Below are positions 7,263 through 63,023 of a stretch of DNA of 64,000 nucleotides, in pieces. The first letter of the stretch is position 1. Each line of letters begins with the position of its first letter. The stretch lies in the IMG/VR virus record IMGVR_UViG_3300023181_000025, positions 62,001 through 126,000 of that record; one strand, 5' to 3'. Made by a program: the position numbers and the translations under genes. The notes beneath the pieces were generated by a model. That model was not told the DNA's origin, did not search any database, and saw only the letters and a list, made by a program, of their open reading frames with translations.

Positions 7263-7369
7263 TTTTAAATTCCTTTTACCGTTGGAAACCTATTTACACT
7301 AAAAAAATCTCCCCATCAAAAGTTATAAATCTTTTACTTTCAAGAGTAATTTTTATAAGTAATTGATTA

Positions 7370-8440
7370 TTAAGCTAGATTTTCCAATATAATTTTTGCG
7401 GTATTTTCATAAGTCCAGCTTTTTAATTTCACGCCCTCATGATTATACTTACGTCCTGTTTTAGCGGCAACCAACATTGCATCAATCAAGTCAGAATCTT
7501 TGAAATCGTGCCATTCCCCTTGATTTATATCCTCTCCCTCAATGAAGAACCTATCATCAACAGCATCAACCATTCCATTTGGTTCTATTAAAATTGAATT
7601 GCTTGAATTGCAATAATCCTTGTGAGCGTGAGCGTTTAAAACAATTGCTTGTTTCCCGAGGCAGAGACTTTGGAAAAGTGGAAGATTAAACCCTTCGCCA
7701 CCGCTCATACCTGTTAACTCGATATCTGTATTATTCAATACTAAATTATATTCTGAATTAGTGCTAGAATATGGTAAAATATTGACATTCCAAGGGAGCC
7801 TTTTATCAGGGAGGGAATTAATAATCATGCTTGATTGCTCCTCATTAGACATGAATGCATTATGAATGGAGCAGTCAAGTCTGTATCTTGGATCGCCGCC
7901 GAAAACTTTTACCCAAGCCTTAATAACGCGGATCGTATTTTTTCTTTGTTCTAATTTTCCCTTTAGGCCGAAGGTGAGAACCTCTTTTTCGTCTTCACGC
8001 TTTTCTATCTCAAAAAAAGATTCACTATCAAATCCAAGCGGCGCGTATATTGATTGTATATTATGGTCAAGAAAAACTGATTGAGTGTATCTATTAGATA
8101 CGAAAACCTTATCTTGCTGAGATAAAATATTTTTTTCATAATTGGTAAGCCTATTAGTTTCATGATAAGTAAATAAGCTTGGATTTCTGCCAACTGAATC
8201 CTCCGAACCTCTTATATGAAAGTATTTTAATGTCGGATTATTTCTGTTATAATATTCCTTTGAATATCTTAAGCTATTTTTTATAATTTCTATATCAGAA
8301 TCCTTAAGTTCAAAACATTCCAAACCAATTCCATTTATTGGAAAAAGGCACACATCTGTCATTTTGGTTATTTCTTTAAAAATATTATAACCTGACTGCC
8401 CTATGCTTGTTAAATTAAAAGGTGCTTGAAAATTTATCAT
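7370..8440 (-). CDS. glycosyltransferase family 4 (GT-B)
   Basis: GKLE.RKN, S.GEGFNLP..Q.L..GK. Confidence 0.8.
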   Translation of the reverse strand: MINFQAPFNLTSIGQSGYNIFKEITKMTDVCLFPINGIGLECFELKDSDIEIIKNSLRYSKEYYNRNNPTLKYFHIRGSEDSVGRNPSLFTYHETNRLTNYEKNILSQQDKVFVSNRYTQSVFLDHNIQSIYAPLGFDSESFFEIEKREDEKEVLTFGLKGKLEQRKNTIRVIKAWVKVFGGDPRYRLDCSIHNAFMSNEEQSSMIINSLPDKRLPWNVNILPYSSTNSEYNLVLNNTDIELTGMSGGEGFNLPLFQSLCLGKQAIVLNAHAHKDYCNSSNSILIEPNGMVDAVDDRFFIEGEDINQGEWHDFKDSDLIDAMLVAAKTGRKYNHEGVKLKSWTYENTAKIILENLA

Positions 8441-8486
8441 ACTTATGGTCCGCCAAATTCAATTAAGAATTAGGACGGATTAATTT

Positions 8487-8873
8487 TTAGAAAAGAGGAT
8501 CTTCTTCGTCCTCTTCAACGGGGGATGGCTTGCTAGATTTAGCTTTTGGCTCAGAAGTTGCCTGTGATGACTTATCGCCCTTTGGCGGCAAGTCAATTCG
8601 GGAAACCTTGATATAAACCTTAGATTGCTTTTGTCCATCCTTTTCCCAAGTGTCTTGGACGAGTTCCCCCGTTACAATTGCAAAATCCCCTTTGGATGCA
8701 TATTTCTCAAGGACTTCCGCAGTTTTCTCCCAAGCCTCAACTTGAAAGAAGCTCGCTCCCGCATCTTTTCCGAACTTATCAACTGCGATAGAGCCTGTCG
8801 CCTTTTTCTTACCGCCCACATCAGAAACTTTAAAATCTTGAGACCATCTTCCTGTTAAATTTACTATGTTCAT
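8487..8873 (-). CDS. ssb: single-stranded DNA-binding protein
   Basis: MN.V.L.GR, F..V.AW.KTAE, KG....V.G.L....W..DG, acidic tail ending DPLF. Confidence 0.92.
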   Translation of the reverse strand: MNIVNLTGRWSQDFKVSDVGGKKKATGSIAVDKFGKDAGASFFQVEAWEKTAEVLEKYASKGDFAIVTGELVQDTWEKDGQKQSKVYIKVSRIDLPPKGDKSSQATSEPKAKSSKPSPVEEDEEDPLF

Positions 8874-9191
8874 TTTATTTTTTTATTAATACTATTCAAT
8901 AGAGAGTATACCGACTCAAAGAAATAAATCAAGCATAAAGTTGCGCAAATCCCAAAAAAGATTTCGATTGACCGACAAAACAATATATTAACCCAAAACA
9001 CGAAGCAGAATGCGCATTTCGTAGCAACATATATAAACGCCTTGGCAATTGGGTGACCCATTCTACTGCGAAGTATTAATTTAATTCCTTCTGTTTTGAT
9101 TATCGCTTCCCTGATCGGCCTGCCAATACTTGTGCGATTTAGTAGTATCCAGAGGAAATAGGGAAATAATAGTTCTGCGTTCATTTTTTTC

Positions 9192-9219
9192 TTGACAACT
9201 AAAAATCGTTCGTTATAAT
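9192..9219 (+). promoter_or_regulatory. sigma70-type promoter
   Basis: TTGACA-16 nt-TATAAT. Confidence 0.7.
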
Positions 9220-9384
9220 ATACTCTTACTCGCTTCGCTCGTAATTTATAGGATTTAAATTTATAAATAAATATTAAATTAAAAGCGAAGCTTTTCAGAA
9301 CTAATCGAGCTTGCGAGGTTAGTTCTGTAATCTTAAAACGATATATTAGACCTTACCTCTCTTCGTTCGTTAAGGTCTTTTTCT

Positions 9385-9413
9385 ATTATAAGCATGCCCT
9401 TTCGTTTTGTCAA
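9385..9413 (-). promoter_or_regulatory. sigma70-type promoter facing the previous one
   Basis: perfect TTGACA-17 nt-TATAAT on minus strand. Confidence 0.75.
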
Positions 9414-9428
9414 GAAAATAATTTCAGA

Positions 9429-9457
9429 TTGACAATTCTCATTATTTTTGGTATCTT
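9429..9457 (+). promoter_or_regulatory. sigma70-type promoter of sigma-factor gene (near-leaderless)
   Basis: TTGACA-17 nt-TATCTT, ATG 8 nt after the -10 box. Confidence 0.65.
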
Positions 9458-9465
9458 AATACTTT

Positions 9466-9972
9466 ATGAACGAAACCGAAAAAACCTTACTGAAGCGTTA
9501 TCTAGAAACGGGGGTAATGGACGAGAGACTATTACTTATAAACAAAGGAATTCTTGACTTCATATACCAGAAGTATTTTCTTTCATTTTCTTTTATAAAA
9601 GACGATCTTATGCAAGAGGGCCTTCTTGGGCTTCTCGAAGCCTTTAATAGATTTGATGAAAGTCGCGAGGGAGGATTTTTTAATTATAAAAAGCTTTGGG
9701 TTAGAAAAAAGATGCAAGTTCTAGCTTATAAGCAAAGCAGGATTAATTCTTTCAGCGATCTAAAAATTTCAGAACCAATCTCATTTTGGGGAAGTTCTTG
9801 CTATAGATTAGAAAGAATTCAAAATGTTATTGACTTAGTTGAATCTTGCGATAAAATATCAATTCACGATAAAATTGAAATCGCCGAAGCCATAAAAGGT
9901 AATAGGCCCGGCTTCAAGAACAGCAAAACCTTTGCGAAGTTAAGAAAATTAGTAAGTTATGACAAAATTTAA
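9466..9972 (+). CDS. phage sigma factor (sigma70 region 2)
   Basis: DDLMQEGLLGLLEAFNRFD.SR...F..Y...WVR. Confidence 0.8.
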   Translation: MNETEKTLLKRYLETGVMDERLLLINKGILDFIYQKYFLSFSFIKDDLMQEGLLGLLEAFNRFDESREGGFFNYKKLWVRKKMQVLAYKQSRINSFSDLKISEPISFWGSSCYRLERIQNVIDLVESCDKISIHDKIEIAEAIKGNRPGFKNSKTFAKLRKLVSYDKI

Positions 9973-11068: not shown

Positions 11069-11116
11069 CCAAAAAATAGTGTAAATAATAAAGCAAAACA
11101 TAACAAAATAAAATAT

Positions 11117-11575
11117 ATGAAAATTGAATTCACGCAGGACTTCGAAGTAAAAGTCCAAAAAGATGGGGAAGAAACTAAAGTAAAAACTTTTGAAGGGGAT
11201 AAAAAATATTCCATCGAAAGCTTCAGAAATGCCGGTAATATTGTCGAGATTTCTTTTAAAGATGGATCTAGGATAAATAGATTGGCCGCTGGTTTAGTTA
11301 AAAGCGTCGAGCAATCGAAAGCTGAAATCAAGGAAGATCAAGAGTCCCAAGAAGAGCTAGATAAAATTAACAAAGAAATCGCGGACAGGGAGTTTGCAGA
11401 AATTAAGCAAAGAGAAGAAGATGAGGCCCGTGCTGTTAAAGAGCAAGAAGATGCTCTTCTGGCAGAACAAGAGAGAGAGGAACTGGCAGCAAAAATTGCC
11501 GAAGAAAATGCCAAAGAAGAGGAAAAAGAAGCCAAAAAGACAAAGAAAAAGTCAGACAAAGTCGATAAAGACTAA
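11117..11575 (+). CDS. hypothetical protein with charged coiled-coil tail
   Basis: E/K/A-rich C-terminus; preceded by AGTGTAA motif. Confidence 0.6.
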   Translation: MKIEFTQDFEVKVQKDGEETKVKTFEGDKKYSIESFRNAGNIVEISFKDGSRINRLAAGLVKSVEQSKAEIKEDQESQEELDKINKEIADREFAEIKQREEDEARAVKEQEDALLAEQEREELAAKIAEENAKEEEKEAKKTKKKSDKVDKD

Positions 11576-11864: not shown

Positions 11865-13370
11865 ATGACTAAAGATTTTTACGAACACAAGACAGTTACA
11901 CAAAAACAATTAGATTTTTGGTTCCTGAAGAGAAAAAACGTTCTTTTTATATCCGAGTTCGGGGTCGGGAAAACGACCATTGTAAAAAATTATTTTGAGA
12001 GCATGGGTCTAAACTATGCTATATTCAGCGGTGCCACACTGGACCCTTGGGTAGATCTAATTGGGATTCCAAAACTAGTTGAGAAAGAATTTTCGAGGAA
12101 AGACGAAAAAGGCAAAGAAATTAAATATATTGATAAAGTATTAGAATTTGCGCGTCCGCAGAATCTAAGTGAAGATATCGAAGCGATTTTCATTGATGAA
12201 TTTAATAGATCACACCCGAAAGTAAGAAATGCGGTAATGGAATTAATGCAGTTTAAAACAATTAATGGCAGAAAATTTCCCAACCTCAAGGTCATATGGG
12301 GCGCGATAAATCCAGACAACTCTGATAATTCTTATGATATTGATGTTGTGGACCCTGCACAATTAGATAGATTCCACGTTATTATTAATTTGGCTAATCA
12401 AATTAACGTAGAGGTTTTCACAAAAAAATATAATAAGGCAATTGCAGAGTCTTGTCACAATTGGTATAATAAATTAGACCAATCGTTTAAAAGCTTTGTT
12501 AGCCCGCGTCGTTTAGATTATGCTGTGGAGCACTATTTACAAGGTGGAGATATAAGAGAGATTTTACCGCATAAGGGTTTAAATATTGTGGATTTGGTAA
12601 AACAATGGCGCACAAGCAATGATTTTGACAAATTTAAAACTCTAATATCTGCGGGTGACGAGGATCAAATTAAAATATTTCTAGGTAATCAAGAGTCTTA
12701 TCAATCTGTGCTAAAGGATTGCTTAGGGAGTAACGAATATTGTAATATACTAATAAAATATGCCCTACCCGAACAAATATTGGCGCTTGCAGAAAGTGAA
12801 CCGAAAACGGCTAATTTAATTTACAAAGCCGCCCAAACAAGAAAGGATTTATACGAAAGCTTGAACGAACATAAGAAGGCATCGGGATCTTACCCCGATT
12901 GGTTTTCTAGTTCTTCTGGAGCGGTTTTAAATGCCAAGGTTTGTTTGGATTGTTTTGAAGAGCAGATCAATATTTATCCCCTTAATCTTGGATGGCAAAC
13001 GGAAGTAAATGATATAGCTGGGTTAGTTAATTCAAGGGCACTTTCGGAAATACTTGATGATATTAAATCTCCTTCCGAGGTTTCAATTGTTTCAATTAAT
13101 GAAGATTCGGCCATTAATTTTCTTCGTTTTTGTAAGAAATTTTCAGATGCTTTTGGAATTTCTAAAATATATGAAGATGATACCAACTCAAAGAAAATAG
13201 TATCTAATAAGTTTAAATCCCTTTATTATAGTTCTCTTTACACCTTTTATTTAAAGGATGCAAATTTCTTAGGAGTTGAGTATGAGGTTCCGGGAGTAAT
13301 AAAGCTTATCAATTCGTTTAGTGGCCCGAAAAAATTAGTTAAAGGCAAATTTCTTCAAGAAGATCTATGA
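11865..13370 (+). CDS. MoxR-like AAA+ ATPase
   Basis: FGVGKT, DL.GIP, IFIDEFNR, GAINP, DPAQLDRF, SPRR. Confidence 0.88.
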   Translation: MTKDFYEHKTVTQKQLDFWFLKRKNVLFISEFGVGKTTIVKNYFESMGLNYAIFSGATLDPWVDLIGIPKLVEKEFSRKDEKGKEIKYIDKVLEFARPQNLSEDIEAIFIDEFNRSHPKVRNAVMELMQFKTINGRKFPNLKVIWGAINPDNSDNSYDIDVVDPAQLDRFHVIINLANQINVEVFTKKYNKAIAESCHNWYNKLDQSFKSFVSPRRLDYAVEHYLQGGDIREILPHKGLNIVDLVKQWRTSNDFDKFKTLISAGDEDQIKIFLGNQESYQSVLKDCLGSNEYCNILIKYALPEQILALAESEPKTANLIYKAAQTRKDLYESLNEHKKASGSYPDWFSSSSGAVLNAKVCLDCFEEQINIYPLNLGWQTEVNDIAGLVNSRALSEILDDIKSPSEVSIVSINEDSAINFLRFCKKFSDAFGISKIYEDDTNSKKIVSNKFKSLYYSSLYTFYLKDANFLGVEYEVPGVIKLINSFSGPKKLVKGKFLQEDL

Positions 13371-14539
13371 CTGATTCTGAAAGAAATAAAAGATTCGATA
13401 TAATTAAGTATCAATTGATGGAGTTTTCTGAGTGTTTTTATGAACTTGGGAAAATAGGAGACCCTATTTGGGACGACTCAATTCCAACTGCCCAGATAGA
13501 GTTTACTCGCGATGGAAGGAGACTTGCATTTAGATGGAGCACAATTGATTTTGACAAGCATGATGACTATACAATTATGGCTACTTTATGCCATGAAATG
13601 TGTCATATTATTTTGCAACATGGCAAAAGAGGCTTGAAGCTCACAGACCATCGGAAGGCGAATATAATGATGGATGTATATGTAAATCATTTAATGGTTG
13701 ACGGGTTTGGAATGAACAGGTCATTGATTAATAACTGGAAAGACTGGTGTTGGCGCGATACCGTTTTTAATATAAATATAGAACATAAGCCATCTTTTGA
13801 ATATTATTATAATATTGAAGATGAGTTTATTGTTCCCGGCTTTAGCACCAGAGATGGCCATTCGTTTCTTATCGCGCCCGATTCTGAGATTAAAGATGCT
13901 ATAGAGGATGCCGCAACTGTGTTTTTTGATGCTCTCCCAAGCGGATACGGGGATGAGGCCAAAGAGATATGTTCCGATTTTGAAACAAAAAAATCAATTA
14001 AGAGAAAATTTGAACATCTAGTGAAGGGATTGGTTTCCTCAATAAAAGAAAAAGATGAATCGTTATTTGAATCTTGGGGGCAGTTAGACAGAAGGCTTTG
14101 CGATTTTACAACCGATATACCCGGATCAATAATTATAGATAGTCATATTGCTCCAAGAAAATATCGTTGTTATTTTTATGTAGATAATAGCGGATCGTGT
14201 GCTAATTGGGCAAAGAAATTTTGTAATGTTTCCGCATCCCTTGATGAAAAGTTATTTGAGGTGAAGCTTTTTAGTTTCGATACCAAAGTGTATGAAGTTG
14301 AAAAACAAAATAATTTATACCGTCTATATGGTGGAGGAGGAACGAGCTTTGAGGTGGTTGTAAATCATTTGCAATCGCAAGAAGAAAAAGCGGACATTGT
14401 AATTGTTTTGACCGATGGTTTTGGCGAACAGGTTTTTCCAAAGAATAAGAAAATTTGGAATTGGTTATTAACAGAATGCGGGACAGCCAGCTCTCTAGAT
14501 AGGGCTGGCAATATTTATAGATTATCTCAGTATGAATAA
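13367..14539 (+). CDS. metallopeptidase-vWA protein (DUF2201-like), AAA partner
   Basis: HEMCH zinc motif; MIDAS DNSGS, GGGTSF, TDG. Confidence 0.85.
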   Translation: MTDSERNKRFDIIKYQLMEFSECFYELGKIGDPIWDDSIPTAQIEFTRDGRRLAFRWSTIDFDKHDDYTIMATLCHEMCHIILQHGKRGLKLTDHRKANIMMDVYVNHLMVDGFGMNRSLINNWKDWCWRDTVFNINIEHKPSFEYYYNIEDEFIVPGFSTRDGHSFLIAPDSEIKDAIEDAATVFFDALPSGYGDEAKEICSDFETKKSIKRKFEHLVKGLVSSIKEKDESLFESWGQLDRRLCDFTTDIPGSIIIDSHIAPRKYRCYFYVDNSGSCANWAKKFCNVSASLDEKLFEVKLFSFDTKVYEVEKQNNLYRLYGGGGTSFEVVVNHLQSQEEKADIVIVLTDGFGEQVFPKNKKIWNWLLTECGTASSLDRAGNIYRLSQYE

Positions 14540-15230
14540 AATAAATGCTATATATTTTTCCTGTGAGAGGGATGCGGATATGCTAGAGAACTCAATCGAC
14601 TCGTTGCGATTAAATTATCCAATTAATAGGATCATTGTTGCAAACGATTTAAACGATCCAATCTTAAGAAAAATTCCCGGAGTGGAAATTATAAATAAAA
14701 AGAAATCTAGCGAAAAACTCTATGGACTTGAAAATATTGGTGAGATGCTTTCTTTTTTTAAATTCGCATCGAATGATTGCGATTATATACAAAAGATTGA
14801 CAGCGATACATTGGTTTGCTCAGATTTAGCTTATAGAAATCTGGAAGAGGGAAAGTGGGACGCATACGGGTCTTTTCCTATGGCAATTCCCGAAATGATC
14901 CCCCCAAGGCATTTCGCGGGACCGTCCTATTTTCTTAGGTCTTCTTTAGCGGCGAAATTATTTGACTTTGGATTCCCAAAAACGGTTCATGATTGGGCTT
15001 GGATGAAATACCCCGAGGACATGGTAATAAGTGATATTTGCAATCATCTCACTCAAAACATTCAAGTTGATGGAACCGCCATGCATAAGGCCGGAAAGTA
15101 TTTATTCGATACATACTTGACAAAAATAGCGGGTTGTGATAAAAGTGAAATTACAAAATACGGATTTGCTCATTGTCGGACTAACCCCTATGTTTTGCGG
15201 TATATTAAGGAAAAGATTTATGTAAAATAA
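14532..15230 (+). CDS. putative GT-A glycosyltransferase
   Basis: KIDSD DxD motif, G..YFL, PED. Confidence 0.55.
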   Translation: MNKINAIYFSCERDADMLENSIDSLRLNYPINRIIVANDLNDPILRKIPGVEIINKKKSSEKLYGLENIGEMLSFFKFASNDCDYIQKIDSDTLVCSDLAYRNLEEGKWDAYGSFPMAIPEMIPPRHFAGPSYFLRSSLAAKLFDFGFPKTVHDWAWMKYPEDMVISDICNHLTQNIQVDGTAMHKAGKYLFDTYLTKIAGCDKSEITKYGFAHCRTNPYVLRYIKEKIYVK

Positions 15231-15687
15231 TAACTTTTGCTATTGAATATGGAGGATTAGTTTGTATTTAGCTTAGAGAAAAATTAAAATATGAAAACAA
15301 AAAAACTGGAATTATCAAATGAAGAAGCAAAGCTACTAAATAATATTTTAGTAGAACATTGTATGAGTGTGGTAGAATTGCTAAATACGTGTAAAACAAA
15401 ACAAGATCACGACAACACGTTGAAGATTATTCAGTCGTCTGTCTTTTCTCAGCAAACTCTTTTCGCCCAAGTGGTTTCTAGAGAATATGAATTTGGAGAG
15501 GGATTTTTAGATTTTCTAAATGCCATTATAGAAGCGGCTATTGAATATCTTAAGGAAATCAAGGAAAAAACAAATGATATTCTTCAAAACGTCACATTGA
15601 GCACAAACATTGATTTGCTTGAGGGCATCATAAAAAAAATTCCAGAAAAGAGCTTGATTATTACCTGATCACAGATATCATATTTTT

Positions 15688-16188
15688 ATGAGCACTTTTA
15701 AAAATAGACAAAATAAATGTTTCGATACGGTTTGTGGCCAAAAAATTTGGAAGTCTCGAAATGTAGCGGTTGCGACTTGTATCTTGCGCCCAAAGCCCCA
15801 AGAAGACTCAAAATTACAAATTCTTGCCATCGAAAGAGGCCCCGCCGTAACCGACACAGGTAAATTTTGTTTTCCCTGTGGGTATCTAGATTGGGATGAA
15901 ACCGTTGAACAAGGGGCGCTTAGAGAAGTTTTTGAAGAATCCAACATTTCACTTTCCGAAGAAGATTTAGAGTTTCAATATGTAAACAGTGACCCAAATT
16001 CCGAACTTCAGAATGTTACCATGCATTTTATTGCATACGCTCTTGACGGGGAAGAAATCTCTGGCAAGAATGCAGAAGAAGGTGAGATTACCAGTGTTAG
16101 GTGGGTTGATATCGAAAATATCAAAGATTATATTTGGGCTTTTAATCATGATAAAATTGCACTAAATTACTTACGCCATGTCCTTTGA
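15688..16188 (+). CDS. Nudix hydrolase
   Basis: GYLDWDETVEQGALREVFEESNI Nudix box. Confidence 0.92.
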   Translation: MSTFKNRQNKCFDTVCGQKIWKSRNVAVATCILRPKPQEDSKLQILAIERGPAVTDTGKFCFPCGYLDWDETVEQGALREVFEESNISLSEEDLEFQYVNSDPNSELQNVTMHFIAYALDGEEISGKNAEEGEITSVRWVDIENIKDYIWAFNHDKIALNYLRHVL

Positions 16189-16371
16189 TATAAAAATTAT
16201 TAATTACTTAGAAAGGCTCGCGGGTTTGAAGGCTAAAATAAATACGCGTTATTATGGTTCAGTAGAAGCTATTACTGAAAAAGGCGAAAAAGTTATTGTC
16301 CCAGATAATAATTTTGAATATTTGTCAGAAAGTAATTCCCATAGTAATAATACTGGTGTAAAATAAAAAGT

Positions 16372-16711: not shown

Positions 16712-17056
16712 CTTATGATTGAGGAATGGAAAAGAGTCTTAACCAAGGTAACTGTTTTTCCATTGGCAACAATTGATTCAGTATTTTTTATCTTAAAAGA
16801 TTCTCAAAAAACTATTGACTTTATTACTACTTGTAGTAAAACAGGGGTGCAACCAATAAAAACATTGGTAAGCCTTAAAAACTTATTAAAATATGAATAT
16901 CGAAGACGCATTGAAAGTTTTATTGACTCCGGACGGTAAAGGGGCCAAAAGAAAAGCAGTGATCTTATCAGAACTTTGTGTTACAGCAAATGCTAATTTA
17001 GTTCGTGATATCATTGAAAAAATGTTGAAGAATAAGAAATTAGTGTAAATATATCT

Positions 17057-18858: not shown

Positions 18859-19461
18859 ATGAAAAACATTGCCGTCATAATGACCATGGAAGGCTATAGC
18901 CTTGTCAATTCAGAAGTATTTACTGAAAATAATCCTAATACCCCTGTTTACTATTTGTATGGGGACGCATCCAAAGAAAAAGGCAAAAGAAATATTGATA
19001 GGCTCGTAAAGAAGTGGTGGGAATCCGAAGGTAAAGAATTAGATTTTGAATACGCCTTATTTATGGAATGGGATGTATTGTTTGATGAGAAAATTGAAAA
19101 TATATTTTCAGAAGATTCCGATTTTGAAGTAAAAACTTTAATACAGGATGGGAGTGGCTGGATTGGATTCCGAGACAGAAGAAAAATTTTATCAGAATTT
19201 AAAACTTTAGTAGGAGTTGGCCCGCTTTGTTTGTTTAGAATTAGCCGAAAATGCTTAGAAGTTATTTTTAATCGAAAAAATATTGATGCTTTGTATGCTA
19301 AAGATATGGCGGCGGGCCTTAGATTTGGTTCACTCATTAATAGTTTTAGTTTTCAAATAAAAGAATTGGATAATATTAAAGGTGTTGATTGGGGTGGCGA
19401 AAATAAAGTCGTAAAAGGCAAGGGTGTTTGGCACCCAGTAAAAAATGTAGATTTTAGTTGA
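18859..19461 (+). CDS. putative glycosyltransferase-like protein
   Basis: EWDV motif, C-terminal WHPVK. Confidence 0.4.
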   Translation: MKNIAVIMTMEGYSLVNSEVFTENNPNTPVYYLYGDASKEKGKRNIDRLVKKWWESEGKELDFEYALFMEWDVLFDEKIENIFSEDSDFEVKTLIQDGSGWIGFRDRRKILSEFKTLVGVGPLCLFRISRKCLEVIFNRKNIDALYAKDMAAGLRFGSLINSFSFQIKELDNIKGVDWGGENKVVKGKGVWHPVKNVDFS

Positions 19462-19490
19462 CAATAATCTAAAAATAGTGTAAATTTCAT

Positions 19491-19854: not shown

Positions 19855-19932
19855 GCGGGAATAGCTCAATGTAGAGCGCGACTTGGTTTTAAAAATCCCG
19901 TCGAGGCAGCGGTTCAAACCCGTTTTCCCGCA
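19855..19932 (+). ncRNA. tRNA-like RNA with enlarged anticodon arm
   Basis: GCGGGAA/TTCCCGC, normal D/T arms, CGAC-17 nt-GTCG. Confidence 0.7.
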
Positions 19933-21080: not shown

Positions 21081-21083
21081 CAT

Positions 21084-21168
21084 GGAGTATTATGTAAACT
21101 GGTGTTTACGGTTGCTTGGAAAGCAACAGGCCGTTAGTTCGGCAAGGGTTCAATTCCTTAATGCTCCG
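21084..21168 (+). tRNA. tRNA-Ser(GGA)
   Basis: GTTGC-TTGGAAA-GCAAC, long variable arm. Confidence 0.88.
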
Positions 21169-21341: not shown

Positions 21342-22118
21342 TTATTTGATTTCCGCTTTTCTAGTGTCTAAACCCTGTTGAAATAGCCTTGATTCAGCCT
21401 CTCGTCTTAACCATAGGCCTTTTAGCTTTTCTCTTGACCACAGCCTTCTCATGCTCAATATGTCACTAGGAACATTTTCCACTTTATCATTAGCGATATT
21501 ATACTTAATCCATCTCATTTCTTTTCGCGAATCCGTATTAGCTAGCGATGGGCCTCGATTAAAAACTAGCGAGGTTAAAGCTCCGTTAGAATGCGGATGC
21601 AATGTTGTGGGGGCAAGAGAGAACGCATCTTTTGTTTGCTTGGTGAAAACCGGCATGGTATAATTAGTAAATACTTTTTCGGCTTGATTGTAATCAAACC
21701 TTAATAAATTTCTAACCTTTGGAAGGCCATTATAATATGCGTTTTTCCCGGTCATTCCAGACACAGACTGCATCAATTGTATTTCTTTTTCTGTTGCTAC
21801 GCCTGTAAAAGCTTTACGTATTTGATCTTTAGTCATCATCCCTAAGTCATTCCCAATGCATACAGTTACTCCCGATGAGGTTGTTTGCCAAGCAGGAACC
21901 GTTGGTCTGGTTAGATACTTGTCATAGTATTCTCTAGTTCCAGATTCATAATAAATTATCAAATCAACGCTTTTTTGAGAAACTGGGAGCGATAAACCTT
22001 CGCTAATAACGTCATTAGGGCCAGCAAATGCCAGCCCCATAAACGCTACTAATAATAGTAATGTTTTTTTAATTAATTTCAAAGTATCCCACATTTTCCA
22101 TTTTGAATTTAGAAGCAC
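21342..22118 (-). CDS. lysozyme-fold endolysin with signal peptide (true start probably ~22071-22094)
   Basis: LIIYYESG, SGVT..IG.DLG, AL.SLVFNRG, GL..RREAE..LF; KKTLLLLVAFMGLAFA. Confidence 0.8.
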   Translation of the reverse strand: MLLNSKWKMWDTLKLIKKTLLLLVAFMGLAFAGPNDVISEGLSLPVSQKSVDLIIYYESGTREYYDKYLTRPTVPAWQTTSSGVTVCIGNDLGMMTKDQIRKAFTGVATEKEIQLMQSVSGMTGKNAYYNGLPKVRNLLRFDYNQAEKVFTNYTMPVFTKQTKDAFSLAPTTLHPHSNGALTSLVFNRGPSLANTDSRKEMRWIKYNIANDKVENVPSDILSMRRLWSREKLKGLWLRREAESRLFQQGLDTRKAEIK

Positions 22119-23411: not shown

Positions 23412-23471
23412 AGTAAATTTATTTACACTAAAAATCTTGACATACTAGAAAAAGTTGATATATTCTTGCCC

Positions 23472-23831: not shown

Positions 23832-23874
23832 TTACTGGAAACTTTAAAATTTTAGTGTAATATTAGCATACTAT

Positions 23875-26832: not shown

Positions 26833-26936
26833 ATCACTATTTACACTTTTTTGGTTGACTTTTTCTGAAAATGGTGTAGTTTTTCGACAAATGATAAATT
26901 TCTTGCTATTTTTTGAACCTGTGCTAAAATATTAAT

Positions 26937-27551: not shown

Positions 27552-27558
27552 AGAAATT

Positions 27559-28437: not shown

Positions 28438-28875
28438 ATGATTAAGAAAATTTTAAATTATGTAAGTTTTGTGTTATTTTTCTGGAAATTTAATGATGGT
28501 TTATCGCCTTCATTTAAACAGATGGGGATGTTTTCAGATTGTCAGGCTTCTCGCGAGAAGGTAGATCGTGTTTATTCGCGAAATTCGGGAGCAACGACTT
28601 TTTTATCAACTTATTCTGCGTGGTTGGCTGGAAGAGGCTTCAAGGTTGGGTTCTTTACCTCTCCCTATGGGAAGATGAAGTATTTCTCTGGTGTCGCTAA
28701 TATTAAAAATATTAAATCAGCGGGAGCATATGTTTTCCATACGCGGAAAATGGACGAAAAGGCGAAAGGATTGTCATTAGACTATATTATTGTTGACAAT
28801 ACTGAGGTAGACATCCCACTTATTTTAACTCTTAATGGCGCGGGCAAGAAATTGATTCGTATTGATACAATTTAA
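28438..28875 (+). CDS. short terminase-ATPase-like protein
   Basis: SRNSGATT (cf. gp17 SRQ.GKT), KGLSLDYIIVD. Confidence 0.4.
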   Translation: MIKKILNYVSFVLFFWKFNDGLSPSFKQMGMFSDCQASREKVDRVYSRNSGATTFLSTYSAWLAGRGFKVGFFTSPYGKMKYFSGVANIKNIKSAGAYVFHTRKMDEKAKGLSLDYIIVDNTEVDIPLILTLNGAGKKLIRIDTI

Positions 28876-28892
28876 GTGTAATTATAATTACT

Positions 28893-29060: not shown

Positions 29061-29114
29061 AAATGCGGAGATTTATTTCTTCCCAAATACAAAAAATTGT
29101 GTAATAATACAAAC

Positions 29115-29972: not shown

Positions 29973-30185
29973 CTTTTGACTTAAAAGAAAACATGGTGAC
30001 TAAATGATTATTGTCATGGTTAAGCTAGAAAATACTGCTAGCAGATTATTTAGAGTGATGCGATAGCTTAGCAAGCTGAGATTATTCAAGGGTTGACAAC
30101 AGTTGCCTGATAATCTCAAATATCTAAAGAAAGTTAAAATATTTTCACTTTTTTCTTCCAAAATCTAAACTTTTAGTGTAAATAT

Positions 30186-39162: not shown

Positions 39163-39237
39163 ATGGAATTGTTACACTAAAAAACAAGAAAGCGTGAAAA
39201 CTATTGACAAAAATGAAAAAAATGATAGACTTTTAAT

Positions 39238-43404: not shown

Positions 43405-43449
43405 TATTTTGATTGACGGAAGAGATTGTTATGGTATGATAAAGCTGTC

Positions 43450-56871: not shown

Positions 56872-57906
56872 GTGAAGACTGATTTGTCATATAGGTGGAT
56901 AGAGACATGCCCACGCCGTGAAATTACTTATGGAGAGCCCGAATGGGTTGGTAACCATAAGGTTGAATTTCATGACCGCATGTCTCACTATTTTCCGGCC
57001 AAGGGCGTTCTTTTTTTAAAGGATGCTTTTTTGTATGGGTCTCAGGGCGTGGTTAGATCGAAAGAGGGGAAATCAAAGTCTTTTTTGCCTATTTTATGGC
57101 CATCTCAATATGAAACCAAATTTAAATATTTTGAAAAGCCCCACAATACTGAGAGCCTCTCAGGAAATGTAGCGGCTATTTTTTCGCCTTGGGCGCAAAC
57201 AAACTATTGTCATTTTGTGTTGGATTGTTTAAGTCGCCTTAAAACATTAAGAGATGCGGGATTCGATGACAAAGATATAAGTAAATATATACTTCCAATC
57301 CCGCCATCAGGTTTCTGCAATGAACTGGTGAGAAGGACAGATATTGATCAATCAAAAATTATATGGGCCAAGGACCACGATTTATTTGTATGTGAGAATT
57401 TAATAGTCCCGTCTTATCCCGGATCGGCAAGAACATATGATGACACTATTAAATATATTCACTCGTTACGAGAAAATAATTTTGACTTAAACAAAAAAAG
57501 GAGAATTTATATTGAGAGAGGCAAGAGCAAAAGAAAAATACTTAACAATTCTCAAATCTATGACGTGTTGGACAAATACAATTTCGAGATTTTTGACGAA
57601 CGAAGTTTTGAAAAGGCGGACAAAATTTTTGCTGAAGCTAATTTAATTGTTGGGGCGCATGGAGCAGGTATGGCCAATCTGATTTTTTGTCAGCCACATA
57701 CTAAAGTTTTTGAGATTATGCCTTCATCTTGGCCAACTCCATTTTTCTTTTCTCTTTCAAAAGTTTTGAATTTAGATTATAGTTGCATGTTGGGAATAAG
57801 CGAAGGAAATATTTTCAACGATGTCAATAGCTGTAATGCCAATATGACTATTGAGATTCCCGTTTTCGAGAAGCAAATAGAGCGATTAGTCTTGACAAGT
57901 GAATAA
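56872..57906 (+). CDS. glycosyltransferase family 61
   Basis: NY.HF, IYI.R....R...N, F..A..IVGAHGAGMAN..FC. Confidence 0.85.
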   Translation: MKTDLSYRWIETCPRREITYGEPEWVGNHKVEFHDRMSHYFPAKGVLFLKDAFLYGSQGVVRSKEGKSKSFLPILWPSQYETKFKYFEKPHNTESLSGNVAAIFSPWAQTNYCHFVLDCLSRLKTLRDAGFDDKDISKYILPIPPSGFCNELVRRTDIDQSKIIWAKDHDLFVCENLIVPSYPGSARTYDDTIKYIHSLRENNFDLNKKRRIYIERGKSKRKILNNSQIYDVLDKYNFEIFDERSFEKADKIFAEANLIVGAHGAGMANLIFCQPHTKVFEIMPSSWPTPFFFSLSKVLNLDYSCMLGISEGNIFNDVNSCNANMTIEIPVFEKQIERLVLTSE

Positions 57907-57926
57907 AGTTTGGTAAAGTCTTCGTT

Positions 57927-59279
57927 ATGAAGCTATCAAAATCAAAAGATCATGACGTTAATTACCTAGCTGCGGTAATTGAAATTGAATCAATTCAAGA
58001 ACACCCAAACGCTGAAAAGCTCCAAATTATTGAGGTTTTTGGAGGAAATGTAATTATTGGAAAAGGTAGTTATTCAGTGGGGCAAAAGGTAGTTTATTTC
58101 CCGATTGAAACAAGCATTGAGCCTGAGTTCCTTAGTTGGGCGAATCTCTTTAGCGACCCAAACCTAAACAAGGACGAAAAGAGCAAGGGTTTCTTTGAAG
58201 CGAAGGGAACTAGAGTAAAACCAATTCGTTTGCGCGGAATCCCCAGCGAAGGGTTCGTTTATCCCGTCGATAAACTTGCTGAATTTTATGGAGCTAAAGA
58301 AAGTGATTTTAAAGTTGGCGAAACCTTTGACGAGGTTGGCGGCAAATCTTTGGTAAAGAAATGGGTCAGAAACACAACTGTTTCCCAAGTTCAAAGTGTA
58401 AAAGTAAAACTTCCTAAGTGGCTGGAAAAATTTCCCCGTCCCATTAGAAAATTTATTGGACAGAAGCTTTATAATCGCAAGGATGAGGGTGTAAAAGCTT
58501 CTATTGTTCCGGGACAATTTCAATTCCATTATTCTACGCCTCAGCTCTCTAGAACTTTCTTTGTATTGTCGCCGGAGGATGAAATTACAGCGTCTTGGAA
58601 ACTACACGGAACTTCTGCCGTTTTCTGCAATATTCTTGCCTATGAAAAACAGGGAATTATCGAAAAAGTGTTTAAGCGCAGTAAAAAGAAGGGGTATAAG
58701 TTCTTTTATGCTTCAAGGTCTGTCTTAAAGACTCGCAAGGACGAAACTTGGACAGATGATGTTTGGGGAAAGCATGCAAAAGAAGTTTACGAACGCGGCA
58801 TTCCTGAAGGAATTACAATCTTTGGAGAGCTGGTTGGCTACTCTTCGGCTCAAAAGCAAATTCAAAAAAAATATGATTACGGTTGCTCGGTTGGCCAAAG
58901 TGAATTGTATGTTTATCGTATCACTCATACGGATAAATTCAGTCAAGTCAGAGAACTTTCTTTTCCTGAAATTCAGGAATTTTGCGAAACCTTTGACTTA
59001 AAAACGGTCCCAGTTATTTACCAAGGAAAAGCAAAAGATTTGTTCCCGGAAATTCCAATTGACGAGAACTGGAGCAAAGCATTCGTTGAAAAACTTTCAG
59101 AAAATTACCTTGAAAAGGATTGCGAATTCTGCAAGAATAAAGTTCCAGCAGAAGGGGTTGTTGTAAAAATTGACAGTAAAGAAAATAAGCCCGTCTTTAA
59201 ACACAAAAGTGTCGCCTTTAAATTTCTTGAGAGCAAAGAAAGAGATAGCGGAGAAAGTAACATCGAAGAAGAATCATGA
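57927..59279 (+). CDS. RNA ligase with N-terminal OB domain (DRB0094-like)
   Basis: HPNA.KL, VVYF, IRLRG..SEG, KLHGTS, GELVG, EGVV. Confidence 0.85.
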   Translation: MKLSKSKDHDVNYLAAVIEIESIQEHPNAEKLQIIEVFGGNVIIGKGSYSVGQKVVYFPIETSIEPEFLSWANLFSDPNLNKDEKSKGFFEAKGTRVKPIRLRGIPSEGFVYPVDKLAEFYGAKESDFKVGETFDEVGGKSLVKKWVRNTTVSQVQSVKVKLPKWLEKFPRPIRKFIGQKLYNRKDEGVKASIVPGQFQFHYSTPQLSRTFFVLSPEDEITASWKLHGTSAVFCNILAYEKQGIIEKVFKRSKKKGYKFFYASRSVLKTRKDETWTDDVWGKHAKEVYERGIPEGITIFGELVGYSSAQKQIQKKYDYGCSVGQSELYVYRITHTDKFSQVRELSFPEIQEFCETFDLKTVPVIYQGKAKDLFPEIPIDENWSKAFVEKLSENYLEKDCEFCKNKVPAEGVVVKIDSKENKPVFKHKSVAFKFLESKERDSGESNIEEES

Positions 59280-60729: not shown

Positions 60730-61000
60730 TACCAAAAGAAGTTTGGATTAATTATATGTAGGTAAAACTTTTTTCGAGACTGGAGAGTATCCAATAAATT
60801 TAACCACCCATAATCCAGCATTAAGAGAAGAATTAATTGATATAAAAATTAATCCGCAAAGTTATAATAGAAAAGATTTAGAAGCACGAATTTATGAAGA
60901 ACTTGATAGTCTTCATAAGACTATAGACAAATCAACTATTAATTTTAAATATAATTGGGACTTAGCCGCAGATATAATTACACAAGCAAGAAAACTATAA
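60723..61000 (+). pseudogene. frameshifted ~91-aa gene
   Basis: ATG 60723 hits TAG 60759; open start-less frame 60752-61000; one extra TA separates them. Confidence 0.55.
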
Positions 61001-61637
61001 CATGTCAATTAACAATACTTACTATACCGTGGCCGGAATTCGTTTTAATTCGGTCGAAGAGTTCAAGGGATATCTAAAGCCAAGACTTTTTACTGACACC
61101 TCGGAAGAATATTATAATCTTTATGTCGAACCATTTGACGACAATGGATATAATGAAAAAATTACAAAAACGGAAAGTGGGCTCCATGTAATTATGGATG
61201 GCTTTAACGGAAGTTATGTAATTGTGGGAAAAATACTTAAGAAAAGCTTATACAGCCTTGAAATGACATCCTTTGCGGATATTCAGGCTGAAGTAGACTG
61301 GGGCGATTTGGAGGACAAGATCTATATGTATTTTGGAAACCACGGGAAAATGTTGGATATTCACATTGGAGGGCACCTGCATTAAATATGATTAGTCGAA
61401 TTATTTCATTCCATAGTCTTGATTGGGAAGGGGGACTTGTTGAGGACACGTCTGCCTTCAATAGTATTTCAGAAGTTGGTGGACAGGATGAACCGGACAA
61501 CTATTTAATTTTTGACGAAAATGGGAGCTGTGAACAAATCGAAAATTGTCTAGAGAAAATTGAAGAATTGGTAAAATATGGCCAATTTGATATTGACATT
61601 GTTCGCGAAATCATATTAAATGAGGTCTTCAAACAAT

Positions 61638-62057
61638 ATGAATAAACCACCTGATATTATCATAACTACCGCCGCTTCGGGCGCGGGAAAATCGACTTTT
61701 TCTAAATTGCTATGCGACAATCAGTTGGGCTGGGTGTCAGTGGAGGCCGATTCATTTTTTTACGATTCCCAAGGAAATTACAATTTCGATGCGTCGAAAC
61801 TTGGGCTAGCCCACAAAAGTTGCCAAGATCAATTCTTAAGATATCTTAAGGAACCATCCGTAAAGACTATTATTGTGGCCAATACAAATACCAAACCCGC
61901 AGACTATAAGTTCTATGAGGACGCGGCAAATAAGTTGGGGTGCCGGATTTTCCACATTATCATTCAAAATCGCCACGGAAATGAAAATGTCCACAATGTC
62001 CCATTTCAGACTCTTGATAGACAAAAAGACAATATTTTAAATAACATTAAGCTATGA
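61638..62057 (+). CDS. AAA_33/polynucleotide-kinase-like P-loop protein
   Basis: ASGAGKST, EAD.FF, V.NTN, N.HNVP. Confidence 0.8.
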   Translation: MNKPPDIIITTAASGAGKSTFSKLLCDNQLGWVSVEADSFFYDSQGNYNFDASKLGLAHKSCQDQFLRYLKEPSVKTIIVANTNTKPADYKFYEDAANKLGCRIFHIIIQNRHGNENVHNVPFQTLDRQKDNILNNIKL

Positions 62058-62249
62058 AAGTTTACAAATTAGAGGTTTACGTGATGGATGTTTACGACGA
62101 AGGGGAAAAGACGATCGTTCAGTGCATTGAAGACAGCGATTATTTTTCTTGCTATGTAAAAGATGTAAAATCTGTAGACGCGGGAGAGTGGAGCGATGAC
62201 CATCCATTAAATAGAATAGAAACCTCAGCGAAAGAACTAGAAAAGCTAT

Positions 62250-62489
62250 TTATTCTTGATTAATTTTATTTTCTTCTTGAATATCTTGCTTACACTCCAC
62301 CTTTGCGGCCTGATAAGTTCCCCAATGTCCGGTTACGATTGAATAAACAGAGATAAAAACCAACACAGGGACAGAATCCTTTAGCCAAACACAAATTGGA
62401 ATAGATAAAATTAGCCATATAATAGTTAACCAGCCATTTATTCGGCGCATTAATATTGGGCTATCAATCAATTCTAACAATTTTCTCAC
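62250..62489 (-). CDS. small two-helix membrane protein
   Basis: two hydrophobic segments; TGTGTAA motif upstream. Confidence 0.6.
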   Translation of the reverse strand: MRKLLELIDSPILMRRINGWLTIIWLILSIPICVWLKDSVPVLVFISVYSIVTGHWGTYQAAKVECKQDIQEENKINQE

Positions 62490-63023
62490 AACTTATATTA
62501 CACACAAAAATAAACATATGGAAGACATTCACGGATTAATTGCAGGAAATATCAAAACAACCAATTATGAAGAATTTTTGGAAATTATTAAATTAATAAA
62601 CAAGGATTATGGACAACTTCAAAAAGAAGGGAAGTTCACCCATACATATTTTAAAGATACTCTTACTGATTGGGAAACAGTCAGGGGTTGGAAACATAAG
62701 GAAGAGGATGCAAAGGAACTCCGACATGTGCTTAGAACTGAGTGGTATATAGGGGGAGTAAGCGGGGGGAGCTGTTGGGATGATGGGTCAGAAAACAATC
62801 ATTACAGTGTTGTTTCGGATTCTTCTCCAGAAGAATTAACTATTCTAGATGCGATTTTACTGAAATTTTGCCCCTCTATTAATTTTCTTGAATACAAGAT
62901 TTTAACTAACAAACTAGTTGAATACAAAACAAGGTCAGAAAATGAATATTATGGAAATTCTTCAAATTACGCAAGTTACACTGTAGTTGTGGAGGATTTA
63001 TTTAACTACATTAAAGAAAAAGG

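What the first reader, a model, noticed from the sequence alone, without database searches (positions are those of the whole stretch)
7294..62504. Recurrent (A/T/G)GTGTAA motif: candidate phage late promoter
Seen in intergenic or gene-end positions, correctly oriented, 5-35 nt upstream of a start: minus strand 7294, 23423, 26841, 39172, 62498; plus strand 11078, 16355, 17042, 19477, 23854, 28875, 29098, 30175. It heads the lysis and tail operons, the isolated minus-strand genes, tRNAs and both selfish elements. Known analogy: T4 gp55 reads the single box TATAAATA. Inference: recognised by a phage sigma factor, possibly 9466-9972 or one outside the window.
Basis: partly seen in the sequence, partly recalled or inferred. 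Interest (0 to 1): 0.6.

Follow-up and report, generated by a model that had tools for sequence, protein, structure and literature searches.

The report
Phage-specific GTGTAA promoter box
The recurring GTGTAA word is very likely the core of a promoter class that this uncultivated 211-kb phage and its relatives use, probably with a phage-made sigma factor, to switch on structural genes, tRNAs and homing-endonuclease genes, often so close to the ATG that the mRNA has no leader.

Summary
The motif is real and non-random. All 13 listed sites exist. AGTGTAAWTA occurs 7 times in the window against 0.39 expected. Genome-wide, 14 of 31 AGTGTAA lie within 40 nt sense-upstream of a start, against a 3.9% background.

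It is more than a single box. The full element is TTCnCA, 13 nt, A(G/C)TGTAA, then 8-9 nt to the ATG or the tRNA 5' end. A second class has a 20-31 nt leader that often carries an SD-like word.

In eight related metagenomic loci, analysed without this genome, GTGTA and TGTAA are by far the most enriched words upstream of genes (33 and 39 of 71 regions; 1.3 and 3.1 expected). They sit at orthologous positions while the flanks diverge.

A separate TTGACA-17-TAnnnT class, also leaderless, heads the small early-looking genes and the sigma gene at 9466-9972.

Two phage sigma-like proteins exist. The better candidate reader lies outside the window (genome 10857-11543). It is conserved wherever the box is, and the one phage that uses CTGTAA carries the only R-to-E change in its otherwise invariant LIRNNY helix.

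No RNA data exist, so transcription starts and timing are inferred. The closest known analogue is phiEco32 gp36 (AATGTA box), not T4 gp55.

The parts
7291..7300 (-). Box AGTGTAAATA, with no clear -35-like element. It lies 31 nt before the ATG of the 107-aa ORF 6939-7262, which is followed by nrdA (4693-6939) and nrdB (3626-4720).
11078..11087 (+). Box AGTGTAAATA, 32 nt before the ATG of ORF 11117-11575. The related contig L013 has its only GTGTAA in the syntenic gap.
16336..16364 (+). Bipartite site: TTCCCA, 13 nt, GGTGTAAAAT. It overlaps the end of ORF 16178-16366. Only a 20-aa ORF follows, and tRNA-Phe starts at 16560.
17042..17051 (+). Box AGTGTAAATA. The tRNA-His 5' end at 17057 is 8 nt after GTGTAA.
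19458..19486 (+). TTGACA, 13 nt, AGTGTAAATT. The tRNA-Met 5' end at 19491 is 7 nt after GTGTAA.
23420..23429 (-). Box AGTGTAAATA, 11 nt before the ATG of ORF 23004-23411, which is followed by the GIY-YIG endonuclease gene 22069-23007. It is divergent from a TTGACA promoter on the + strand.
23854..23863 (+). Box AGTGTAATAT, 14 nt before tRNA-Val (23875).
26838..26847 (-). Box AGTGTAAATA, exactly 8 nt before the ATG of 26572-26832, so a leaderless geometry. The operon continues with 26225-26569 and the 715-aa gene 24062-26209, which has a gp9/10-like N-terminus and an SGNH esterase domain.
28875..28884 (+). Box AGTGTAATTA, 11 nt before the ATG of the 55-aa two-TM (holin-like) ORF 28893-29060.
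29080..29107 (+). Bipartite site: TTCCCA, 12 nt, TGTGTAATAA. A 22-aa ORF follows, and tRNA-Trp starts at 29370.
30175..30184 (+). Box AGTGTAAATA with a weak upstream TTCCAA. It heads the 58-aa ORF 30186-30362 and the IS607-like tnpA (30355-30987), the methyltransferase (30984-31691) and tnpB (31670-32908).
39169..39198 (-). Bipartite site: TTCACG, 14 nt, AGTGTAACAA, 9 nt before the ATG of the LAGLIDADG homing-endonuclease gene 38167-39162. It is divergent from a TTGACA promoter.
62495..62523 (-). TTCCAT, 13 nt, TGTGTAATAT, before the small ORF 62250-62489.
9466..9972 (+). Sigma-like protein P0001 (168 aa). It has a sigma region 1.2-2 domain, a disordered linker and a three-helix C-terminal domain.
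9429..9457 (+). Class A (sigma-70-type) promoter TTGACA-17-TATCTT, with the ATG of the sigma gene 8 nt after the second hexamer. This is the other promoter class, shown for contrast.

Best explanation
GTGTAA is the core of the -10-region element of a phage-specific promoter class.

What is shown:
- The full element is TTCnC(A), 13 nt, A(G/C)TGTAA(A/T)(T)A.
- The word is strongly over-represented, oriented with the genes, and sits 8-9 nt before ATGs or 7-14 nt before tRNA 5' ends.
- The same word sits at orthologous gene fronts in eight related loci.

What is inferred:
- Host RNA polymerase core carrying a phage-encoded sigma-70-family protein binds the element and starts transcription about 8-9 nt after the box. 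The start is therefore often on the A of the ATG (leaderless mRNA) or at the first base of a tRNA.
- Sites without the upstream hexamer carry a near-perfect extended box (W-AGTGTAAATA). Sites with the hexamer tolerate a looser box, as expected if both halves add to binding by a single factor.
- The class drives the virion genes, a tail-fibre-like operon, tRNAs, the nrd operon and several homing-endonuclease / IS genes.
- A separate TTGACA-17-TAnnnT class, presumably read by the host primary sigma, drives the small early-looking genes and the sigma gene at 9466-9972.
- The most likely reader is the 228-aa Zn-ribbon sigma P0192, encoded outside the window (genome 10857-11543).

My probabilities: promoter element about 0.85; read by a phage sigma about 0.7; that sigma being P0192 about 0.55.
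For: Enrichment and orientation:
-, as given in the observation check.

Geometry:
- In 50 sites from nine genomes, the gap from TGTAA to the ATG is exactly 8 nt in 15 sites and 9 nt in 7 sites.
- Sites with gaps of 18 nt or more carry an SD-like word in 11 of 19 cases, against 6 of 31 for short gaps (Fisher p = 0.012).
- tRNA-His, tRNA-Met and tRNA-Val begin 8, 7 and 14 nt after the box.

Second half-site:
- In relatives, 26 of 36 sites have TTCnC(A/G), 22 of them at exactly 13 nt.
- A two-block matrix trained only on relatives finds 11 sites in this genome, against 0.25 (maximum 1) in 20 Markov shuffles.

Conservation:
- In 71 upstream regions of eight related loci (proteins 39-69% identical; this genome excluded), GTGTA is in 33 (1.3 expected, 2e-38) and TGTAA in 39 (3.1 expected). 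These are the top two of all 5-mers.
- Six orthologous gene fronts keep the box while the flanks differ.
- Several sites follow a hairpin plus T-run.

Gene content:
- Sites head the portal, protease/scaffold, connector, major tail, chaperone and tape-measure genes.

Two promoter classes:
- 44 TTGAC sites lie 34-37 nt before ATGs, with A at -11 and T at -7. They are mostly in 126-211 kb and before the sigma gene.

The sigma P0192:
- It has at least 120 homologues and keeps its place next to phoH, the ERCC4 nuclease gene and the terminase gene in relatives, including a Tara ocean contig. Those loci also carry GTGTAA 8-12 nt before ATGs.
- The AF2 model shows a sigma2-like domain, a Zn ribbon and a sigma4-like domain. 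All top Foldseek hits are sigma factors.
- The phage of L025/L035 uses CTGTAA or CTGTAT at 11 upstream sites and GTGTAA at none. Its sigma P0197 is the only one of 120 with LIRNNY changed to LVEENY.
Against: - No transcript data exist. No RNA run holds this phage, and the DNA runs are identical copies. The start site, strand use and timing are therefore inferred from geometry alone.
- The covariation is a single evolutionary event.
- P0192 sits in an operon that itself carries class-B boxes (genome 7747 and 10171). Something else must make the first copies.
- About half of the window's sites lack a convincing upstream hexamer.
- P0192 scores below Pfam's cut-off for Sigma70_r2 (21 bits against 24) and has no significant sequence match in the PDB.
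- The host is unknown, so a host alternative sigma cannot be excluded.
- Gene starts come from a crude caller of my own.
Confidence: 0.72

Rival explanations
1. The box is read by the small sigma encoded in the window (9466-9972, P0001). P0001 would act either alone or as the first step of a cascade that later hands over to P0192.
For: - P0001 is a genuine sigma region 1.2-2 protein. The family profile matches SigA/RpoS region 2 in the PDB at E = 2e-17, and all top Foldseek hits are sigma factors.
- It sits behind a TTGACA-17-TATCTT leaderless promoter, so it should be made early.
- Its small three-helix C-terminal domain would fit the sites that lack an upstream hexamer.
- Its only close relative, P0002 (36% identity), lies on a contig whose single GTGTAA is at the syntenic gene front.
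- It would solve the problem of who first transcribes the P0192 operon.
Against: - The family is thin. Only three hits fall below E = 1e-10 among 1.8 billion representatives, whereas the box is conserved over a wide clade that always carries P0192.
- Loci of more distant P0001-like proteins show no GTGTAA excess.
- Its region 2 is closest to primary sigmas, which read TAnnnT-type boxes.
- No covariation evidence could be gathered for it.
Confidence: 0.2
2. The box is a host-type promoter read by a host sigma, either the primary sigma acting on an unusual extended -10 element or an alternative sigma. No phage factor would be needed.
For: - The upstream hexamer TTCACA differs from TTGACA at one base. 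The distance from that hexamer to TAA is 16-17 nt, the standard sigma-70 spacing.
- Two sites (19458, and genome 171514) carry TTGAC(A/T) itself.
- The host is unknown.
Against: - The same genome holds a distinct, well-populated TTGACA/TAnnnT class, so two specificities are in play.
- The third base of the upstream hexamer is C in essentially all bipartite sites.
- The TG lies directly against TAA rather than one base away, and relatives have no conserved T at -7.
- The box is kept in phages from leaf litter, other soils and the ocean, whose hosts are unlikely to share an alternative sigma. All of them carry P0192.
- The G-to-C switch in one phage tracks a change in that phage's own sigma.
Confidence: 0.08
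3. The word is an RNA-level signal (a processing or translation signal), or a by-product of Val-stop (GTG TAA) gene ends in AT-rich spacers.
For: At several sites the TAA is the stop codon of the upstream gene, for example window 17046-17048 and genome 16296-16298.
Against: - It occurs before tRNAs as well as ORFs, so it is not a translation signal.
- A second conserved DNA word sits at a fixed 13 nt upstream, which an RNA cleavage site would not need.
- Most sites are not at gene ends.
- The enrichment beats all same-composition words.
Confidence: 0.03

Closest known systems
phiEco32 gp36 sigma and its middle/late promoters (AATGTA centred at -11.5, plus a -35-region contact); PMC12276001
   Same: - Both are small phage-encoded two-domain sigma proteins. 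gp36 has a sigma2-like N-terminal domain, a linker and a compact sigma4-like C-terminal domain.
- The core word is nearly the same: A(G/C/A)TGTA here against AATGTA there. One internal site of this genome reads AATGTAA.
- The position is nearly the same, if the ATG is +1.
- An upstream contact also matters in both.
- Early genes are read by the host sigma and later genes by the phage sigma.
   Different: - There is no detectable sequence homology. hhalign gives probability 0.2% for the P0192 family and 0.3% for the P0001 family.
- P0192 carries a four-Cys Zn ribbon between its two domains.
- The upstream element here is a clear TTCnCA hexamer at a fixed spacing.
- No gp79-like cofactor was sought.
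- The phage is a roughly 200-kb siphovirus-like genome, not a 77-kb podovirus.
T4 gp55 late promoters (TATAAATA)
   Same: - The extended box TGTAAATA differs from TATAAATA by one base.
- The distance to the inferred start is similar.
- Many sites have no upstream hexamer.
- It heads virion genes and homing-endonuclease genes.
   Different: - The upstream TTCnCA element is present in many sites.
- Neither sigma is gp55-like.
- The invariant part is GTGTAA, not the A/T run.
- TATAAATA itself shows no comparable enrichment: 14 of its 54 genome-wide copies are intergenic or partly so, against 18 of 31 for AGTGTAA.
- Dependence on gp33 or a sliding clamp is unknown.
Sigma cascades of Bacillus phage SPO1 (gp28, gp33/34), from my own knowledge
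   Same: Phage sigma factors replace the host sigma and read bipartite promoters of new sequence. Two sigma genes in one phage suggest a possible cascade.
   Different: The consensus sequences and the sigma families are different. A cascade here is only a hypothesis.

Membership tests
T4 gp55-type late promoter system | A single -10-region box TATAAATA with no -35 element. | tested here: not met
   The conserved core is GTGTAA. A TTCnC(A) hexamer lies at 12-14 nt in 26 of 36 sites in relatives, and 11 bipartite sites are found in this genome.
T4 gp55-type late promoter system | The sigma is a gp55 homologue. | tested here: not met
   hhalign of the P0001 family against T4 gp55 gives probability 1.8%. 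P0192 gave no match in a tblastn search of the phage collection.
T4 gp55-type late promoter system | Activation needs gp33 and the sliding clamp loaded on replicating DNA. | not tested
   No search for gp33 or gp45 analogues was made.
phiEco32 gp36-type promoter/sigma pair | The -10-region word is AATGTA, centred near -11.5. | tested here: inconclusive
   A(G/C/A)TGTA is present. Its centre would be about -12.5 if the ATG is +1, but no start site has been mapped.
phiEco32 gp36-type promoter/sigma pair | A small sigma with a sigma2-like N-terminal domain, a linker and a sigma4-like C-terminal domain. | tested here: met
   AF2 models of P0192 and P0001 show this layout. The Foldseek neighbours are sigma factors.
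phiEco32 gp36-type promoter/sigma pair | Sequence homology to gp36. | tested here: not met
   hhalign probabilities are 0.2% and 0.3%.
Sigma-70 family (Pfam Sigma70_r2) | A region 2 domain. | tested here: met
   - P0001 scores 22.3 bits against a cut-off of 24, but its family profile matches SigA at E = 2e-17.
- P0192 scores 21 bits. Many of its homologues carry a precomputed PF04542 hit, and its fold neighbours are sigma factors.
Canonical sigma-70 / extended -10 promoter | TAnnnT with A at -11 and T at -7, and, for the extended form, TG one base upstream of the hexamer. | tested here: not met
   The TG abuts TAA. The bases after TGTAA vary among relatives, with no fixed T at -7. A separate class in the same genome does meet this rule.

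The most novel reading that the evidence does not exclude
A globally distributed, wholly uncultivated clade of roughly 170-210-kb siphovirus-like phages may run a two-sigma cascade on an almost leaderless genome.

- Host sigma would read the TTGACA promoters and make the mini-sigma P0001.
- P0001 would open the box-only AGTGTAAATA sites, which head tRNAs, the nrd operon, endonuclease genes and the P0192 operon.
- The Zn-ribbon sigma P0192 would then read the bipartite TTCnCA-13-GTGTAA sites of the virion genes and its own operon.
- Arg73 of the LIRNNY helix would contact the G before TGTAA. Its change to Glu in one phage would re-specify the whole promoter set to CTGTAA.
Probability: 0.2. Interest if true: 0.7.

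Novelty: new variant of a known kind. Interest (0 to 1): 0.58.

Why it matters
Phage-encoded sigma factors with their own promoters are a classic theme, but only a handful of pairs are known, and all come from cultured phages. This finding adds several things:

- A promoter consensus and a candidate sigma family (Zn-ribbon type, at least 120 members in soil, freshwater and ocean metagenomes) can be read from sequence alone for a clade with no cultured member.
- That gives a way to split such genomes into expression classes and to correct gene starts, because many ATGs sit exactly 8-9 nt after the box.
- The natural G-to-C box switch, paired with an R-to-E change in the sigma, offers a directly testable residue-base contact.
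- The pervasive leaderless layout of both promoter classes is unusual for a large phage. It says something about the unknown host's translation, where Shine-Dalgarno use is weak.

Tried and rejected
- Near and distant DNA searches, and tblastn of UvsX-like, both sigma proteins and a Tara relative, against 50,697 phage records found nothing useful. There was no cultured relative, only cyanophage nrdA at 65-72%.
- An IMG/VR scan with the 372-aa probe protein found nothing. The word-based search with P0001 found only the protein itself.
- Loci of distant P0001-like proteins (L015-L019) show no GTGTAA excess, so they say nothing about the box.
- RNA evidence is absent. The three public runs that hold the phage are leaf-litter DNA, and their contigs are identical to the window apart from one A>G, so they give no start sites and no footprint.
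- My first single-block matrix drifted into AT-rich sequence and was dropped. I replaced it with a two-block matrix trained on relatives.
- A Bacteroidota-type promoter (TAnnTTTG) shows no sense bias: 18 sense against 24 antisense.
- Host identification through the IS607-like TnpB failed. The 88-89% identical copies lie on 1.5-3-kb contigs binned to unrelated MAGs (Lishizhenia, Woesearchaeota, Marmoricola), so the result is uninformative.
- The record behind L020 (195 kb) is not held, so a whole-genome test in a relative was not possible.
- gp55 and gp36 homology tests were negative.
- The CTGTAA before the 374-aa capsid-position gene (genome 20230) is the conserved C-terminus (…LEL-stop) of the preceding gene. 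I did not count it as a promoter.


Full report
**Setting.** The window is bases 62,001-126,000 of a 211,168-bp IMG/VR virus record, which CheckV rates 100% complete. It has about 36% G+C and 20 tRNA genes. No cultured phage resembles it at DNA level, nor in the proteins tried. The public runs that hold it are leaf-litter metagenomes. My own ORF caller gives about 354 genes.
- Genome 7.7-46 kb is the virion module. It holds the large terminase (13560-16298) and a 1,950-aa tape measure (27347-33199), in typical siphovirus gene order.
- Genome 46-70 kb, on the minus strand, holds replication genes. These include a DnaE-type polymerase, SSB and nrdAB.
- Genome 126-211 kb holds small plus-strand genes of unknown function.

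- All 13 listed sites exist.
- DGTGTAA occurs 35 times in the window against 16.4 +/- 4.4 in shuffles.
- AGTGTAAWTA occurs 7 times against 0.39.
- Genome-wide, 14 of 31 AGTGTAA lie within 40 nt sense-upstream of a gene or tRNA start. The background for all 7-mers is 3.9%, giving a binomial p of 2.6e-12. This is the highest count among the 210 words of the same composition.
- The only other non-AT-run words with comparable scores are TTGACA-type words and the start context TAATATG.

**Anatomy of the element.**
- Aligned sites read W5-AGTGTAA-(A/T)TA.
- In orthologous regions of relatives the invariant part is TGTAA, preceded by G (or C, rarely A or T) and then mostly A.
- A second word, TTCnC(A/G), lies upstream at a fixed distance. 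In relatives 26 of 36 sites have it, 22 of them exactly 13 nt before the A of AGTGTAA.
- The spacing from that hexamer to TAA is 16-17 nt, which is the sigma-70 holoenzyme geometry.
- A two-block matrix built from relatives alone finds 11 such sites in this genome, against 0.25 in Markov shuffles.
- In the window, sites 16355, 19477, 29098 and 39172 have a good upstream block (the one at 19477 is TTGACA), and 30175 and 62498 a weaker one. Sites 7294, 11078, 17042, 23423, 23854 and 26841 have none, and 28875 only a weak TTCGTA at 13 nt, and most of these carry the most complete extended box. This trade-off is what one expects if both halves add to the binding of one factor.

**Distance to the gene.**
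- Over 50 sites from nine genomes, the gap between TGTAA and the ATG is exactly 8 nt in 15 cases and 9 nt in 7.
- tRNA-His, tRNA-Met and tRNA-Val start 8, 7 and 14 nt after the box.
- A second group has gaps of 20-32 nt. It more often carries AGG, GGA or GAG before the ATG: 11 of 19 against 6 of 31 for short gaps (p = 0.012).
- From this I infer that transcription starts about 8-9 nt after the box. The tight group would therefore be leaderless, and the long group would need its own ribosome-binding sequence.
- This is inference. No RNA run holds the phage, and the DNA runs are identical copies.

**Conservation.**
- A 372-aa protein (probably the major tail protein by position; no family hit) has relatives at 57-64% identity on contigs of up to 195 kb.
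- Six such loci, plus two more distant ones found through the sigma protein (39-44% identity, one from Tara Oceans), are syntenic with the virion module.
- I took only the tool's gene calls for these eight loci and left this genome out. Among all 5-mers in the 40 nt before the 71 genes that have an upstream gap, the two most enriched are GTGTA (33 regions, 1.3 expected, 2e-38) and TGTAA (39 regions, 3.1 expected, 3e-34).
- The box recurs before the portal, protease/scaffold, first connector, major tail, chaperone and tape-measure genes, while the flanking sequence diverges.
- Several sites sit directly after a GC hairpin plus T-run. This is the usual terminator-promoter junction after a highly expressed gene.
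- A 6-kb contig that encodes the closest relative of the window's sigma has its only GTGTAA in the gap syntenic to window 11078.

**A second promoter class.**
- TTGACA is strongly sense-biased before genes, 51 against 7.
- Forty-four TTGAC sites lie 34-37 nt before an ATG. Aligned on the ATG, they show A at -11, T at -7 and a pyrimidine at -1.
- The gap between the TAnnnT hexamer and the ATG is 6-8 nt in 25 of 48 cases.
- The tool's independent consensus scan of genome 186-206 kb finds 92 sigma-70-type sites against 56.7 +/- 8.4 in shuffles.
- This class dominates the 126-211 kb region and precedes the sigma gene at 9466. The GTGTAA class dominates the virion module. The window has both.
- Shine-Dalgarno use is weak overall.
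- A Bacteroidota-type TAnnTTTG motif is not enriched. The host remains unknown.

**Who reads the box.** No phage RNA polymerase was seen among the large proteins scanned. Two sigma-like genes exist.
- P0001 (window 9466-9972, 168 aa):
  - Its family profile matches region 1.2-2 of primary sigmas at E = 2e-17.
  - Its AF2 model shows a sigma2 domain, a disordered linker and a three-helix C-terminal domain.
  - Its close relatives are few.
- P0192 (genome 10857-11543, outside the window, 228 aa):
  - It has at least 120 homologues at 36-69% identity. Some are named 'sigma-24 family' by JGI.
  - Its model shows a sigma2-like domain, a four-Cys ribbon and a sigma4-like domain. Its Foldseek neighbours are SigB, SigD, ECF and primary sigmas.
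  - It keeps its place between phoH and the ERCC4 nuclease and terminase genes in every relative sampled. Those relatives use the box.
- The helix PWLNRIISNQIKNLIRNNY is almost invariant across the P0192 family. The single exception among 120 is P0197, which reads LVEENY.
- P0197 belongs to the one phage (L025/L035) whose promoters read TTCCCA-13-nCTGTAA. It has ten CTGTAA sites, one CTGTAT and one TTGTAA, and no GTGTAA box before a gene.
- This is one evolutionary event. Even so, an Arg-to-Glu change paired with a G-to-C change is what a direct contact would predict.
- P0192's operon itself carries class-B boxes: TTCTCT-13-TATGTAA at genome 7747, and TTCTCA-13-AGTGTAT at 10171. That implies autoregulation and leaves open who makes the first copies. 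P0001, which is made from a TTGACA promoter, could do so.

**Comparison with known systems.**
An upstream hexamer is present, and neither sigma is gp55-like.
- A closer analogue is phiEco32. Its 214-aa sigma gp36 has a sigma2-like N-terminal domain and a compact sigma4-like C-terminal domain. It reads AATGTA centred at -11.5 and also needs a -35-region contact (PMC12276001).
- One internal site of this genome reads AATGTAA.
- Sequence homology to gp36 is not detectable. I therefore claim resemblance in mechanism, not family membership.
- Full-text searches found no paper describing this box. That is weak evidence of novelty.

**What the class drives.**
- In the window:
  - a tail-fibre-like operon, whose 715-aa protein has a gp9/10-like N-terminus and an SGNH esterase domain;
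  - three tRNAs directly, and probably two tRNA clusters;
  - the nrdAB operon;
  - a 55-aa two-TM ORF;
  - the gene pair ending in a GIY-YIG endonuclease;
  - a LAGLIDADG endonuclease;
  - an IS607-like tnpA-methylase-tnpB unit.
- An HTH-HNH gene at genome 188147-188788 has a bipartite site as well.
- Selfish genes borrowing the phage's own promoter is familiar from T4 (my own knowledge).
- 'Late' is plausible for the virion genes. It is not shown, and it is unlikely to describe the whole class.

**Verdict.** The motif is a real, conserved promoter-like element that is bipartite in many of its copies. It is most likely read by a phage sigma factor, probably the one outside the window. 

Noticed in passing
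whole genome; in the window for example 9429-9468, 29469-29506, 57892-57929: Pervasive leaderless layout of the sigma-70-type promoters. Forty-four TTGAC sites lie 34-37 nt before an ATG, with TAnnnT ending 6-8 nt before it. Shine-Dalgarno use is weak throughout the genome.
   Followed up: yes
window 29899-29973: A tRNA with anticodon CUA (amber suppressor; ARAGORN labels it 'Pyl'). TAG is the rarest stop: 17 of 354 genes end in it, and none of the 33 genes in the virion module. No in-frame TAG interruptions were looked for.
   Followed up: partly
window 21083-21168 and 19855-19932: Rfam calls a tRNA-Sec-like gene (52 bits against a gathering score of 47) and a further 78-nt tRNA. ARAGORN did not list either.
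   Followed up: no
window 30355-32908: An IS607-like unit inside the phage: serine-recombinase tnpA, a DNA methyltransferase and tnpB. TnpB copies 88-89% identical lie on 1.5-3-kb contigs binned to unrelated MAGs. They are probably mis-binned phage or mobile DNA.
   Followed up: partly
window 9184-9466: A 280-bp gene-free gap holds three consensus-grade sigma-70 promoters: TTGACA-17-TATAAT on the + strand at 9192, TTGACA-17-TATAAT on the - strand at 9385-9413, and the sigma gene's own promoter. The product of the 9192 promoter is unknown and may be a small RNA.
   Followed up: no
genome 19047 (outside the window); L020:4910, L024:3956, L025:4894, L027:4767: A conserved bipartite box lies inside the 490-518-aa protease/scaffold-position gene, 8-11 nt before an in-frame ATG. 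It would give a nested 183-196-aa C-terminal product, a nested scaffold-like arrangement.
   Followed up: partly
genome 13560-16298 (outside the window); L022:1-2177, L035:12699-15371: The large terminase is 890-912 aa in this genome and in two relatives, whose products carry the Pfam family Intein_splicing. Other relatives have 608-630 aa. This suggests an intein in the terminase gene.
   Followed up: no
window 13367-14539, 22069-23007, 26937-27551, 38167-39162: There are four free-standing homing-endonuclease-type genes of three families (HNH, GIY-YIG, LAGLIDADG) within 26 kb, interleaved with the tRNA genes.
   Followed up: partly
genome 42186-42200 (outside the window): A palindrome, TTGACAAATTGTCAA, forms two overlapping opposed -35 boxes before gene 42222-43985. 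It looks like an operator.
   Followed up: no
genome 52691-55273 (outside the window): The replicative polymerase is a DnaE-type Pol III alpha (PF07733, E = 7e-61).
   Followed up: no
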